64,000 nucleotides of DNA from Guillardia theta CCMP2712 (GCF_000315625.1 NW_005434656.1:872638-936637), one strand, 5' to 3'; shown: positions 49,840 to 53,946, counted from the stretch's first letter. Made by a program: numbers and translations. Notes: generated by a model not told the origin, from the letters alone.

Positions 49840-50062
49840 CGTGGGAAGGGAAGGGAAGTGGAGAAGGGAAGATAAGGGAAAGGATGGGATGGGATGGAAT
49901 GGGAAAGGGAGGGGAAGGGAGGGGAGGGGGCTTGGGGGAAGGGACGGGACGGGACGGGACGGGAGGAGATGGGGAAGGGAGGGAGGGGTTGGGACGGGAA
50001 GGGAAGGGAAGGGCAGGGAAGGACAGGGAAGGACAGGGAAGGCAGTTCCTTTTCGGGGAAGG
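49840..50062. repeat. Degenerate GGGA(A/C/T) pentamer low-complexity tract
   Basis: Direct reading; G-quadruplex-prone; just upstream of the TatB-like gene. Confidence 0.85.
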
Positions 50063-50191
50063 GAAGCAAGAAGGACAGTTCAAATTGACAAAGGTATACT
50101 ACTATATAAGAATTTAGTGCCTTGATATTCAGATAAGGTCAAATGTTGAGGGGGGCCGGACAAGGTCGAAGTACGGAGTGCAGGTGCCGCC

Positions 50192-51214
50192 ATGTTTAGT
50201 TGGGGCGAGATCTTTGTGATCTTCGGGGCCTCAGCAATGCTGTAAGTTTGAGCAAGTTGGATGAGATGTGATTGAAGATCAAAGACACAAGTCTTGCTCT
50301 GTTTCATTGCAACAACACATGTCTTAAGATGTTTCTCCTACTCTTTGAGCAAGAGGGTTTGTTGCGTTTTTTGATTGTGATGCCAAACCTTGTTTGTTCC
50401 TTCCACACTTCCTTGCTAACTGCTTCCTAGCTTTGGCAAGAAAGATCTTCCTATCATGTGTCGCAGGCTGGGCAGTCTTGTCGGTAGAGGAGTGGTGTCC
50501 ATGAGACGGGTGATGCATGCTCTGCCGCCTTGCTGAGCTGAGGATTGTTGCGATGCAGATAAAGGATGAATACACCAAGAAAGGACCTCTGTCAGAGTTC
50601 AGCGAGCTACATCATGAGATGAGAACCACTTTGTTTGAAATCAACTCGGTCCATTCAGAAATAAGGTCGAACGTTCAGATCATCCCTCCAATGTATGGCT
50701 CAATGCCATTTTCTCCGGCAAAGCAGCAAAACACGGGCAACACGGTTGCTGCGTATCAAAGTTTGTACAATCAAGAGCCATGTCGTTGAATCTGATGCAA
50801 GTTTTGCTTATCAGGCATACAAAATGCGTATCGGCCTCCGTATGCTCCTCCAGCACAATCAAACGCCACAGCAGAGAAAACAAGCATTCCTCAAACTCCC
50901 CCCGCCAACGCCCCTCATGTACCAACTCATGTCAACCAGACGACGAGCGAGGCAGCTCCCGCTGAAACCTCAGGAGATTCTGTGAGCTCGTCGCAGATCC
51001 TGTGAGTGGGAGGGAGGCTGCTTGCTGCCGCTGACGCCTTATGAGGTTTGGAGCCCCTTCCTCGCACGAGGCAGCCTCGTTTGAGTCCGTGACCAACAAG
51101 ATGCCGGGAGGAGCCGACCACATCCTTGAGATGATCAGGAGAACAGAGCAACTGAGATACGCCGAGTACATTCAAAGCATGTCCAAGCCTTCCAAGCCGC
51201 CCTCTCCCCAATAG
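50192..51214 (+). CDS. tatB: TatB-like twin-arginine translocase subunit (plant mitochondrial mtTatB type), 5 exons
   Basis: GCCGCCATG start; exons 50192-50241, 50431-50509, 50559-~50760, then two more: MFSWGEIFVIFGASAMLFGKKDLPIMCRRLGSLVGRGVVSMRRIKDEY...SELHHEMRTTLFEINSVHSEIR...PGGADHILEMIRRTE; TATA-like TATATAAG at 50103. Confidence 0.8.
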
Positions 51215-51306
51215 ATTCTTCTTCCTCCCTATTTGTTTATTATCTTCTCCTCTTTATCAAACCTTGCCAAGTCTCTTGTGCCATCTCTGACTTCTTGTTT
51301 GCTCCT

Positions 51307-51459
51307 CACCTGTCACTCGAGTCAGTCACGACGCCAAACTTACTCGTCTCCTGCCTCCATGATCCCTCCATGGCGACATGTCTTGTCAATGGGGCGCGCT
51401 TGGCGTAGGAAATGCTCACTTCAGTGCCGAGCTGATTAGGGTAAAACAGCAATGAGAGA

Positions 51460-51500
<41 letters not shown>

Positions 51501-53946
51501 GAGGTATCCTGAGGATCTGAGGGACGAGAGGAAGGAGATACCAATCGATGATCAAGGGGAAGAGAGGAGCGAGGTTTCAAATGAGATGGAGAGGATTTAG
51601 AAACATGGTATGTGATAAGGAGAAAGAAGAAAGGAGGAGTGAGAAATCAGTCGGTAGGTTACCCGTGATTTGAGGAGCTTCAATTCTTCGAAGAGGAGGA
51701 CGTTGGACGCTTACAGTGGCTGTCAGTCTCTTCGTCATTGCTGCCCCTCCCCCTCACTGTGACATTCTTCAAGCGCTTCTGTGCTGGCGTCAAGAGCAGC
51801 TTTGAGCATGTAGCGGTCATCGGAGTAGTGGCCCTGCGGCTTCACGGAGAGACGCTGGTGGAACAGTCAGCATGTCGGGAGCATCGAAATAGGCGTAAAC
51901 AGCTTCTCTGCTCTTCTTCTCTGTTTCCAGCTCAAAAATCTTCTTCTCCAAGAACTTGACCTTGGAGGAGGCGTTCGAGTGTTCTTGTAGCACTGACTCG
52001 CTTCTCTGTCAGGTCAAAGTCACTCAGGTCAATTCTTTCTCTTCGTTGACCTTGTTCTCCTTTATCGTGTCGTGGGCCAGCTTGTCGATCTCAGAACAGG
52101 CAAGACTGATCTCTGACTTGCATTTCTTCACTTCTTTGAACCATCGATGATATTCGGCTTTCAGGTAATTATGCTCTATCCGCTCTATCCCACGCAGTCG
52201 AATGATCTCTTCCAGCTCCTCCTTCACCCTCCTGCCCTCAAACGCCTCACGCTCCATGCCTTGCAGGTCGAAGCGAAGCTGCGAGACGAGCTGCTGCTTG
52301 TCCTTGTCATGTTGGTCAAGAGACTCCCTCAACTCCTTCTCGTGCGTCTCTTTCATCCTCACCATCTCTGCTCGCAGCTCTGCTTGCATCTGCGCTGACT
52401 CGTTTGCCATCGCCTTGAGATTTATCCGCGCCTCCTGAAGCTCCTTCGTCAACTCCCTGTGCTCTGACTGCAGCCATTCAGCTCGCGTGCGCCATCGACT
52501 TGCTTCGGCGTTCCTCTCTTCCGTTTCTTTCCTGATCTCCTCTGCATCCTTCCGCATGTGCTTGGCAGTTTCAATCAAGACCGTCAAATTCCGTTTCATA
52601 TCATCAAATAACACCTCCTGTAGCCTTGACGCCTCCTCCTCCTTTTCTTTCATTGCTTCCTGTAGCCTTGACGCCTCCTCCTCCTTTTCTTTCATTGCTT
52701 CCTGTAGCCTTGACGCCTCCTCCTCCTTGTCTTTCATTGCTTCCTGTAGCCTTGACGCCTCCTCCTCCCTGTCTTGGATCGATGCTTCAGCATTTTTGAG
52801 CTGCTCCAACGTGTCTTTGAATTGTTGTGACATACTTTTCAGTTCTTCTTCTCGTCTTTCCAGTTCTTCTTCACGTTTTCTCCGCAGCCGTGTGCCTTCG
52901 ATGGCATTTTGTTGCAGTTGACGAACCTCAACATTCAGAAGCTCTATGGTCCGATCTGTTTTCGACAAGACTTCTTCCACCTTGGAGATCTGCTCTTCGA
53001 TTTGCTGAAACTCATCTAGAACTAAGAAACACTCGCACTCACTGGCATCGTCATTCGTTTACAAGCAACTACCTTGCTCCTGCATGTCATGGATAAAGCT
53101 ATCTTGCATCTCACTTTTCTGTTGCAATCTGCGGGCAAGTCAGGAGGCAGGCTGTTCGTTGTTGTCTTACCCATCAGACAACTGGTCTACTAGAGCTTGC
53201 AGCTGAATTATCTCACTCTTAAGACTCTGATTGTCTGCCGTACAGAGCTCTAGCTCTTGTTGTGTCGTCTCTTTCAGCCTTACCATCTCCTTGGTCAACT
53301 TTGCGTTGGTAGACATGGCTTCTTGATAGTTGTCTTCTGCTCTCTTCAGAGACTCTTGCAACTTGTCAGTGGCTTCTCGGAAGCTGATCTCCAGGTCGAC
53401 GATGTGCGACCTGTCAGCAAGTGTGAAAGGAATGAGAACAAGCTGACGTTACCTCAGACGATTCTCCGTGTCTTCTCGCACATCATCGATCCTTGCGAGT
53501 TGTTTCTCAACGACGGATATCAACCGGATGTTCTCGTTCAAGTCAGGAGCTTTCCTCTCGGCATTCGCTTTCAACTCAGCCATGGCAAGGAAGAGATCCT
53601 TCAGTTCGATCACTTGCTCCATGCACGCGCGGACGAGCGTCACTTTCTCGACATGATCTGCGCGTCGAAGTTTGACGTCAACGAGAGTTCCGATCTCGTC
53701 GCTTCCTCGCAGCTGCTTCAGCACCACCTCCTTCTTCACTCCCGCCCCGTCGATCTCGACGATCTCGTCGTCTCGCTCCACTCGCTTTCCCTTCCTCGGG
53801 CGATACGCGGGGCTGGCAGGAACGACCATGGAGACGCGGGTGCCCTCGAGGATGATGCCGAGGGTCGTCTTGGCGCCTCGCTCGCTCCCAGCATGCTGCG
53901 GCTTCGCGTGCTTCTCCCGCAGCGCCCGGATGACCTCCTCTGCCAT
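51307..53946 (-). CDS. PDZ-domain + long coiled-coil protein, multi-exon
   Basis: TLGIILEGTRVSMVVPASPA...DDEIVEIDG...LRGSDEIGTLVDVKLRR (PDZ) followed by E/K/Q-rich heptads; 3' end approximate. Confidence 0.75.
52617..52768 (-). repeat. Coding 42-bp tandem repeat x3.6 (EEEASRLQEAMKEK)
   Basis: Units start at 52617, 52659, 52701, 52743. Confidence 0.95.

What the first reader, a model, noticed from the sequence alone, without database searches (positions are those of the whole stretch)
50192..51214. Hidden nuclear gene for a plant-type mitochondrial TatB: possible full TatABC system in a cryptophyte mitochondrion
Seen: splicing at canonical sites (GTAAG 50242 / branch GCTAAC + CTAG 50430; GT 50510 / CAG 50558) gives M-F-S-W-G-E + short TM helix + FGKKDLP + amphipathic helix, a coiled segment, a P/A/S-rich linker and a C-terminal GGADHILE motif. 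An in-frame stop at 50147 precedes the ATG, so no plastid presequence is evident. The ORF track misses it. Known: TatB has an N-terminal Glu, a TM helix, a G-x-x-x-LP hinge and an amphipathic helix; land-plant mtTatB lacks a cleavable presequence and, as I recall it, starts GE..LILGA.A.LLGPKDLP and ends GSD..LE; cryptophyte mtDNAs are reported to encode tatA and tatC. Inference: this organism may retain a three-subunit bacterial-type Tat translocase split between genomes. The hinge is TatA-like (FG) while the Glu is TatB-like.
Basis: partly seen in the sequence, partly recalled or inferred. Interest (0 to 1): 0.75.

Follow-up and report, generated by a model that had tools for sequence, protein, structure and literature searches.

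The report
Known cryptophyte mitochondrial TatB gene
The stretch holds a real five-exon nuclear gene of Guillardia theta for a TatB-type subunit of the folded-protein (Tat) export machine, but it is already in the public annotation as a hypothetical protein, and a 2018 survey lists a nuclear mitochondrial TatB for this alga, very probably this gene.

Summary
A Hanusia phi transcript protein confirms junctions 1/2, 2/3 and 3/4. It stops at the end of exon 4, so junction 4/5 and the C-terminal motif rest on the annotation alone.

Curated Tat models match only below cut-off. Against a TatB profile I built from 30 evenly drawn alphaproteobacteria, hhalign gives 96.9% probability (score 54.6; best of 200 shuffles 22.6). 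The matching TatA profile gives noise. So it is TatB-like, though its hinge is G-K, not the Gly-Pro found in all 60 bacterial TatBs sampled.

The protein has no plastid leader. The genome's other Tat gene, on contig 97, has one.

The gene is not hidden, and little here is new. Petru et al. 2018 list "Guillardia theta nTatB: yes". Its mtDNA carries tatC, and seven other cryptophyte mtDNAs carry tatA and tatC. A full mitochondrial TatABC set was described in jakobids in 2020.

The parts
50147..50149 (+). In-frame TGA upstream of the start codon. No ATG lies between it and 50192.
   Evidence: A 1-nt indel at 50174 in the relative L002 also argues that this leader is non-coding.
50192..50241 (+). 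Exon 1. It holds the start codon, the W-G-E motif (Glu6) and the short transmembrane helix (residues about 4-17).
   Evidence: The Hanusia block ends at 50242.
50242..50430 (+). Intron 1 (189 nt): GTAAGT donor, GCTAAC branch, CTAG acceptor.
   Evidence: It is 11.6% diverged with a 6-nt indel against L002. It is absent from P0005 and P0002.
50431..50509 (+). Exon 2. It holds the hinge F-G-K-K-D-L-P and the Arg-rich amphipathic helix.
   Evidence: hydrophobic moment up to 0.57. The Hanusia block covers 50432-50512.
50510..50558 (+). Intron 2 (49 nt), GT...CAG.
   Evidence: It is 20.4% diverged with a 1-nt indel against L002.
50559..50760 (+). Exon 3. It holds the end of the amphipathic helix, a third predicted helix (residues 55-81) and the conserved IIPPMYGS stretch.
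50761..50814 (+). Intron 3 (54 nt, in frame, with two in-frame stops).
   Evidence: The Hanusia protein skips it.
50815..51001 (+). Exon 4, a Pro/Ala/Ser/Gln-rich linker predicted to be disordered.
   Evidence: The Hanusia protein ends at the equivalent of 51002.
51002..51045 (+). Intron 4 (44 nt, GTGAGT...CTGAC...AG). If it is retained, the frame stops at TGA 51003-51005.
   Evidence: It is removed in the public model P0005. It is not confirmed by Hanusia.
51046..51214 (+). Exon 5. It holds the C-terminal segment with GGADHILE and the stop codon at 51212-51214.
   Evidence: The first 27 residues are in P0005. The rest is open frame only.

Best explanation
This is the annotated Guillardia theta nuclear gene GUITHDRAFT_151568. 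It encodes a protein of about 228 residues (173 if intron 4 is retained).

Shown: the protein belongs to the TatA/B family and is closer to TatB than to TatA. It starts directly with a short membrane helix carrying Glu6. A hinge (F-G-K-K-D-L-P) follows exactly 12-13 residues later. Then come a long basic amphipathic helix, a further helix and a disordered Pro/Ala/Ser-rich tail.

[quoted passage not shown] It would be made in the cytosol and inserted in the mitochondrial inner membrane with its N-terminus towards the intermembrane space and its helices in the matrix. The helix-plus-basic-amphipathic segment probably acts as an internal targeting signal. There it would pair with the mtDNA-encoded TatC as the receptor for twin-arginine cargo, the Rieske Fe-S protein being the precedent from plants. 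The mtDNA-encoded TatA, if G. theta has it as other cryptophytes do, would supply the pore-forming subunit.
For: Gene model:
- P0005 equals the exon peptides.
- P0005 maps to this locus only.
- The Hanusia transcript protein P0002 spans three junctions.
- Introns 1 and 2 diverge far more than the exons in L002.

Family, library scans and look-alike searches:
- The best or near-best hit in each of three libraries is Tat, in register at the N-terminus. PF02416 scores 12.4-14.1 bits; it is the only hit for P0005 and for the Hanusia N-terminus, and ranks third for full-length Hanusia. TIGR01410 tatB scores 16.3-18.6 and TIGR01411 tatAE 14.2-17. The best PDB match is the chloroplast TatA chain 7b7o_A, E 0.2 for the single protein and 0.021 for the profile.
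- The protein language-model look-alikes are PF02416 clusters.

Family, my own profiles:
- Profile of 30 TatBs drawn evenly from alphaproteobacteria: Hanusia 22.7 bits and G. theta 19.3 bits, against a best of 7.4 for 5000 shuffles and 9.0 for 754 open frames of the window. The TatA profile from the same loci gives 5.4 and 4.9 bits, which is noise.
- hhalign of the two cryptophyte proteins against that TatB profile: probability 96.9%, score 54.6, 78 columns. Against TatA: 47.9% over 23 columns.
- Controls: reversed query 12.0; 200 column shuffles reach at most 22.6.
- A gammaproteobacterial TatB profile agrees (96.2%).

Compartment:
- There is no leader, and an in-frame stop lies upstream.
- The Hanusia transcript adds only 12 non-hydrophobic residues.
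- The contig-97 Tat gene has a signal peptide ending ...ACG followed by Phe, the cryptophyte plastid pattern as I know it.

Literature:
- Nuclear TatB is recorded for G. theta, and mtTatB for cryptophytes generally (PMC6251230; PMC8662606).
- tatC is in the G. theta mtDNA (PMC7871985).
- Arabidopsis mTatB has 232 residues, close to the 228 here (PMC13456617).
Against: - Every curated family model scores below its cut-off.
- Most of the profile signal sits in the hinge. With its seven residues masked, the scores fall to 7.5 and 2.4 bits (alpha profile) or 10.3 and 8.2 bits (gamma profile), at the edge of the decoys.
- The Gly-Pro present in all 60 sampled bacterial TatBs is G-K here and G-T in Hanusia.
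- Only one orthologue, Hanusia, turned up among 1.84 billion representatives. My query for that search lacked the membrane helix.
- No direct comparison with plant or stramenopile mtTatB was possible.
- Mitochondrial location and TatC binding are inferred, not shown.
- The paper that lists G. theta nTatB gives no accession, so its identity with this gene is probable, not proven.
- G. theta keeps three genes with a full BCS1 N-domain, so the Rieske role need not fall to Tat.
Confidence: 0.75

Rival explanations
1. It acts as a TatA-type or bifunctional TatA/B subunit rather than as a dedicated TatB. It would oligomerise to thin the inner membrane, as in TatAC-only systems.
For: The hinge begins F-G as in TatA and lacks the TatB Gly-Pro. 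TIGR01411 tatAE scores nearly as well as tatB. The best PDB match is a TatA. tatA is not among the genes named for the G. theta mtDNA.
Against: The alphaproteobacterial TatA profile gives only noise (4.9-5.4 bits), and hhalign gives 47.9% over 23 columns, against 96.9% over 78 columns for TatB. The long amphipathic helix and a further helix are predicted. All seven other cryptophyte mtDNAs encode their own tatA.
Confidence: 0.1
2. It is a plastid or periplastid Tat subunit (Hcf106- or Tha4-type) whose leader exon has been missed.
For: Only one plastid-type TatA-like nuclear gene was found, so a plastid TatB is unaccounted for in the nuclear assembly.
Against: An in-frame stop lies 15 codons upstream, and a 1-nt indel in the relative falls in that leader. 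The public model starts at the same ATG. The Hanusia transcript protein has only 12 extra, non-hydrophobic residues. The true plastid-type gene on contig 97 shows the expected signal peptide plus Phe.
Confidence: 0.05
3. It is not a Tat protein. It is a lineage-restricted, N-terminally anchored membrane protein whose hinge motif resembles TatB by chance.
For: All curated models are below cut-off. The signal collapses when the hinge is masked. Relatives are seen only in Guillardia and Hanusia. The fold search was uninformative.
Against: The register is exact from W-x-E through the hinge to the M-x-R-x-L-G-x-x-V-G stretch after it, with no gap (alignment). The hhalign score is far above 200 shuffles and the reversed control. 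Two independent TatB profiles agree. Two libraries (Pfam, NCBIfam), the PDB chain search and the language-model search all point to the same family.
Confidence: 0.07

Closest known systems
Nucleus-encoded mitochondrial TatB (Arabidopsis At5g43680; Carrie et al. 2016; extended to stramenopiles and Guillardia theta by Petru et al. 2018, PMC6251230)
   Same: Nuclear gene. The N-terminus begins at the membrane helix with a conserved Glu. Hinge plus long amphipathic helix and a long C-terminal extension. Similar length (228 against 232 residues). The organism has mtDNA-encoded TatC. G. theta is listed as nTatB-positive.
   Different: The hinge is G-K, not G-P. G. theta also keeps BCS1 genes with a full N-domain, whereas the plant Bcs1 is described as N-terminally truncated.
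Jakobid (Andalucia godoyi) mitochondrial TatABC: nuclear TatB with mtDNA-encoded TatA and TatC (Gray et al. 2020, PMC7050145)
   Same: Cryptophyte mtDNAs likewise carry tatA and tatC.
   Different: For G. theta itself tatA is not named in the mtDNA report. The jakobid set was called the only complete one described as of 2020.
Alphaproteobacterial TatB (TIGR01410)
   Same: W-x-E in the membrane helix, 12-13 residues to the hinge Gly, K-D-L-P hinge (GPKDLP in 18 of 30 sampled), then M-x-R-x-L-G-x-x-V-G. hhalign probability 96.9%.
   Different: Scores 16-19 bits against a cut-off of 56.5. Gly-Pro is replaced. It has introns and a eukaryote-specific tail. The gammaproteobacterial profile scores about as well, so an alphaproteobacterial origin is not demonstrated.
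Plastid Tha4/TatA-type gene of the same genome (G000 contig 97, L001)
   Same: Same family. G-W-G-E start of the membrane helix and F-G hinge.
   Different: The contig-97 gene passes the Pfam cut-off (29.9 bits). It carries a signal peptide plus Phe leader. It is TatA-like after the hinge. Its intron positions differ.

Membership tests
TatA/B/E family (PF02416) | Score above the curated cut-off of the family model | tested here: not met
   PF02416 scores 12.4 bits (P0005) and 11.5-14.1 bits (P0002) against a cut-off of 21. TIGR01410 scores 16.3-18.6 against 56.5, and TIGR01411 14.2-17 against 53.9.
TatA/B/E family (PF02416) | N-terminal short membrane helix with a polar residue, then a hinge Gly about 12 residues on, then an amphipathic helix | tested here: met
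   Glu6, hydrophobic residues 7-18, Gly19. Hydrophobic moment up to 0.57 over residues 19-45. Predicted helices at 4-17 and 23-49, at low pLDDT.
TatA/B/E family (PF02416) | Profile-profile similarity to bona fide members beyond controls | tested here: met
   hhalign gives 96.9% (score 54.6) against 30 alphaproteobacterial TatBs and 96.2% against 30 gammaproteobacterial TatBs. The reversed query scores 12.0 and 200 shuffles reach at most 22.6.
TatB as against TatA | Better match to TatB than to TatA from the same genomes | tested here: met
   19.3 and 22.7 bits against 4.9 and 5.4 bits. 78 against 23 aligned columns.
TatB as against TatA | Gly-Pro hinge | tested here: not met
   G-K in G. theta and G-T in Hanusia. 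G-P in 30 of 30 alpha and 30 of 30 gamma TatBs. The Pro of L-P is kept.
TatB as against TatA | Glu in the membrane helix | tested here: met
   Glu6 is invariant in both cryptophyte proteins. The feature is also found in plastid Tha4, so it does not discriminate on its own (own knowledge).
Nucleus-encoded mitochondrial TatB | Nuclear gene without a plastid-type or other long leader | tested here: met
   Four spliceosomal introns. A stop lies 15 codons upstream. The public model and the Hanusia transcript agree.
Nucleus-encoded mitochondrial TatB | Co-occurrence with mtDNA-encoded TatC | not testable with these tools
   The mtDNA is not in the assembly: no PF00902 hit in G000. The literature reports tatC in G. 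theta mtDNA MH844545 (PMC7871985).
Nucleus-encoded mitochondrial TatB | Sequence likeness to plant, stramenopile or jakobid nTatB, including the C-terminal region | not tested
   The word searches returned only Guillardia and Hanusia proteins. One lead only: the nearest structure cluster in the Atlas is a Streptophyta 'TatB family' cluster, at TM 0.31.
Nucleus-encoded mitochondrial TatB | Location in the mitochondrial inner membrane in a complex with TatC | not testable with these tools

The most novel reading that the evidence does not exclude
Guillardia theta, and cryptophytes generally, run a complete three-subunit mitochondrial TatABC translocase. TatB would come from this nuclear gene, and TatA and TatC from the mtDNA, with tatA simply unannotated in the published G. 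theta mtDNA. That would make cryptophytes the second lineage after jakobids with the full ancestral set. The K-D-L-P hinge would be a relic of alphaproteobacterial TatB ancestry. Intron-4 retention could give a second, shorter isoform.
Probability: 0.5. Interest if true: 0.35.

Novelty: already known. Interest (0 to 1): 0.2.

Why it matters
Mitochondrial Tat is a patchily retained bacterial export machine. Which lineages keep which subunits bears on how mitochondria lost or repurposed their ancestral translocases.

This gene fills the TatB slot for a cryptophyte, but a 2018 survey already recorded that. A complete TatABC set has since been described in jakobids.

- The likely GenBank identity of the gene (GUITHDRAFT_151568, still named hypothetical), with a checked gene structure.
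- A quantitative TatB-rather-than-TatA call, with the caveat that the hinge lacks Gly-Pro.
- A pointer that the '?' entries for G. theta mtTatA and mtTatC in that survey can now be half filled: tatC yes, tatA still to be looked for in MH844545.

Tried and rejected
Exons were searched by reference, and Pfam found nothing for exons 2, 3 and 5. Exon 1 was too short. Full-length work used the database proteins P0005 and P0002.
- Big protein search: I ran it with an intron-read-through stretch of L002 that lacks the membrane helix. It found Hanusia but no distant kin. With hindsight this was a poor query for reaching plant mtTatB.
- Word searches with P0002 and with P0005 residues 1-75 found nothing beyond Guillardia and Hanusia.
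- Fold search: the AlphaFold2 model had mean pLDDT 49.8. Foldseek against the PDB gave only generic helical hits, best E 0.77.
- Complex prediction with E. coli TatC was not folded because of a eukaryote-plus-microbe rule, so there is no verdict.
- PDB profile search: designer PPR proteins top the list only by summing nine repeats of 3-5 bits each. I treated this as an artefact.
- A weak tatB hit on contig 45 is a low-complexity (LV)n stretch.
- BLASTP of P0005 against the contig-97 exon was not significant.
- My first TatB profile was built from loci selected by a typed 20-letter IUPAC pattern for V-G-P-K-D-L-P. It is biased towards the hinge (30.0 and 26.8 bits), so I replaced it with evenly drawn samples.
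- Alpha against gamma origin: the two profiles score alike, so no donor can be named.
- The look-up of encoding contigs found no record for P0002 or P0005.
- Carrie et al. 2016 is not held in the paper library.

Full report
**What is in the sequence**

The window is G000 contig 18, positions 872638-936637, in an 87.1-Mb, 669-contig assembly. A protein hit names it as Guillardia theta CCMP2712.

At 50192 an ATG opens M-F-S-W-G-E. It follows an in-frame TGA at 50147, and there is no ATG between the two. The splice sites are canonical, each with a CTRAY-like branch:

| Intron | Coordinates | Length |
|---|---|---|
| 1 | 50242-50430 | 189 nt |
| 2 | 50510-50558 | 49 nt |
| 3 | 50761-50814 | 54 nt |
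| 4 | 51002-51045 | 44 nt |

The five exons total 687 nt, which is 228 codons plus a stop.

Exons were handled by reference. Pfam sees nothing in exons 2, 3 and 5 taken alone.

**The gene is real, and it is already annotated**

- A word search with exon 3 found a genomic Logan contig of a close relative (P0001/L002, 93.6% identical in DNA).
- A profile-free search of 1.84 billion representatives, using an intron-read-through stretch of that contig, found P0002. This is a 205-residue protein from the EukProt Hanusia phi transcriptome.
- Searching with P0002 then found P0005, 'hypothetical protein GUITHDRAFT_151568, partial [Guillardia theta CCMP2712]'. It has 200 residues and lies on a 936,637-nt contig.
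- The whole-codon peptides of exons 1-4 occur exactly in P0005, which continues 27 residues into exon 5.
- P0005 maps to these five blocks and nowhere else in the genome.

**Independent support for the splicing**

The Hanusia protein aligns to the window in three blocks. They end at 50242, cover 50432-50512, and start at 50556. There is a gap over intron 3, and the spliced reading is matched.

In L002, introns 1 and 2 are 11.6% and 20.4% diverged, with 6-nt and 1-nt indels. Exons 1-3 are 2-4% diverged with no indel.

The 3' half is nearly identical in L002, so it says nothing about introns 3 and 4.

The Hanusia protein ends at ...HIL. This aligns better with the end of exon 4 (score 40) than with the HIL in exon 5 (score 23). 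Unspliced G. theta RNA would read CTG TGA exactly there. Exon 5 and its GGADHILE motif therefore rest on the public model and an open frame only.

**What family is it?**

Curated models match below cut-off but consistently, and in register at the N-terminus:

| Library | Hit | Score | Cut-off |
|---|---|---|---|
| Pfam | PF02416 | 12.4-14.1 bits | 21 |
| NCBIfam | TIGR01410 tatB | 16.3-18.6 bits | 56.5 |
| NCBIfam | TIGR01411 tatAE | 14.2-17 bits | 53.9 |
| PDB | chloroplast TatA 7b7o_A | E 0.2 (single), 0.021 (profile) | none |

The language-model look-alikes are PF02416 clusters, scoring 0.91 and 0.87.

To get a firmer answer I fetched bacterial tat operons.

- A scan with a typed IUPAC pattern for V-G-P-K-D-L-P returned 120 loci. 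88 held genuine TatB, mostly from alphaproteobacteria. That set is selected on the hinge, so I did not rely on it.
- From one of its genomes I drew 60 alphaproteobacteria evenly and took the 30 best TatB loci, with the adjoining TatA genes.

Results against that unbiased TatB profile:

| Query | TatB profile | TatA profile |
|---|---|---|
| Hanusia | 22.7 bits | 5.4 bits |
| G. theta | 19.3 bits | 4.9 bits |
| Best of 5000 shuffles | 7.4 bits | 10.5 bits |
| Best of 754 open frames of the window | 9.0 bits | not reported |

hhalign of the two cryptophyte N-termini against the TatB profile gives 96.9% probability, score 54.6, over 78 columns. The TatA profile gives 47.9% over 23 columns. The reversed query scores 12.0, and 200 column shuffles reach at most 22.6. 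A gammaproteobacterial TatB profile gives 96.2%.

Caveats:
- Most of the HMM signal is in the hinge. Masking seven residues leaves 7.5 and 2.4 bits (alpha) or 10.3 and 8.2 bits (gamma).
- The hinge reads G-K-K-D-L-P. K-D-L-P is the commonest alphaproteobacterial form (GPKDLP in 18 of 30; none of 30 gammas). The Gly-Pro that all 60 bacterial TatBs share is absent.
- The alpha and gamma profiles score alike, so no ancestry can be claimed.

**Anatomy**

A low-confidence AlphaFold2 model (mean pLDDT 49.8) predicts helices at 4-17, 23-49 and 55-81, then disorder. Residues 19-45 are strongly amphipathic and Arg-rich. This fits TatB's longer helical region. The fold search was uninformative.

**Which compartment?**

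- Neither the G. theta model nor the Hanusia transcript has a signal or transit peptide. Hanusia has at most 12 extra, non-hydrophobic residues.
- The only other Tat-family gene I could detect in the nuclear assembly lies on contig 97 and scores 29.9 bits against PF02416. It has a first exon with a hydrophobic signal peptide ending ...ACG followed by Phe, then a TatA/Tha4-like mature part. That is the expected look of a plastid-targeted cryptophyte protein (own knowledge).
- A weak third hit is low-complexity.

The mitochondrial assignment is thus an inference by exclusion plus literature, not a demonstration.

**What is already known**

- Petru et al. 2018 searched UniProtKB with plant mtTatB. 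They report nuclear homologues in stramenopiles and cryptists. Their Table S1 reads 'Guillardia theta: mtTatA ?, mtTatC ?, nTatB yes', and Fig. S1 aligns a G. theta sequence (PMC6251230). No accession is given. This is the only leaderless Tat gene I find, so it is very probably the same one.
- A 2021 review repeats that cryptophytes with mt TatC have mtTatB and that their mtDNAs encode TatA (PMC8662606).
- The G. theta mtDNA report names tatC but not tatA, among 36 genes (PMC7871985). Seven other cryptophyte mtDNAs share 42 genes, including tatA and tatC (PMC5910586).
- Gray et al. 2020 describe nuclear TatB plus mt TatA and TatC in jakobids, as the only complete set known then (PMC7050145).
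- Plant mTatB has 232 residues and co-migrates with mTatC (PMC13456617).

**Verdict**

The protein is a TatB-type protein and most likely mitochondrial.
- It is neither hidden nor new, and its likeness to the plant protein could not be tested here.
- G. theta also keeps three genes with a full BCS1 N-domain, so the cargo of this Tat system is open.
- The remaining small novelty is the explicit three-subunit reading for cryptophytes, which hinges on finding tatA in the G. theta mtDNA.

Noticed in passing
window 49843-50042: A (GGGAA)n microsatellite of about 39 copies (72% matches) ends about 150 nt upstream of the start codon. The relative L002 diverges strongly here.
   Followed up: no
window 51462-51500: A perfect (AGAC) repeat of 9.8 copies lies about 250 nt downstream of the stop codon.
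   Followed up: no
window 52024-52980 (-): A 318-residue Glu/Lys-rich coiled-coil open frame contains a 42-nt tandem repeat (3.8 copies, 98% matches) that encodes repeated KEEEASRLQEAM units.
   Followed up: no
L001 (G000:C97:44590-47703), exons at L001 1022-1114, 1403-1438, 1501-1596: This is a plastid-type TatA/Tha4 gene. It has a signal peptide ending ...ACG followed by Phe, then G-L-F-G-L-G-W-G-E-L-A / V-I-G-V-I-A-A-L-I-F-G-P-K-N-L. It scores 29.9 bits against PF02416. Its intron position differs from that of the contig-18 gene.
   Followed up: partly
G000:C57:209477-209995, C28:268837-269349, C44:122210-122725: Three nuclear genes have a full-length BCS1 N-terminal domain (92-112 bits). 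The alga therefore seems to keep the Bcs1 route for Rieske insertion beside a mitochondrial Tat system.
   Followed up: no
L002 (Logan contig of run SRR23967302): This 1402-nt genomic contig is 93.6% identical to window 50045-51411, so the run holds a close but distinct relative of G. theta. From about 50850 to 51250 the two are identical but for one base (51079), introns included, while the 5' half differs by 2-20%.
   Followed up: partly
window 50174-50191 and P0002 residues 7-12: The translated leader just upstream of the ATG (R-S-A-G-A-A) resembles the Hanusia N-terminal extension (R-S-W-Q-A-A). In G. theta that frame is closed by a stop and has no ATG. Hanusia may start 12 residues earlier.
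   Followed up: no
window 51002-51005 and the P0002 C-terminus: The Hanusia protein ends exactly where G. theta RNA that retains intron 4 would stop (CTG TGA). This suggests either a retained intron in the Hanusia transcript or a natural short isoform.
   Followed up: partly
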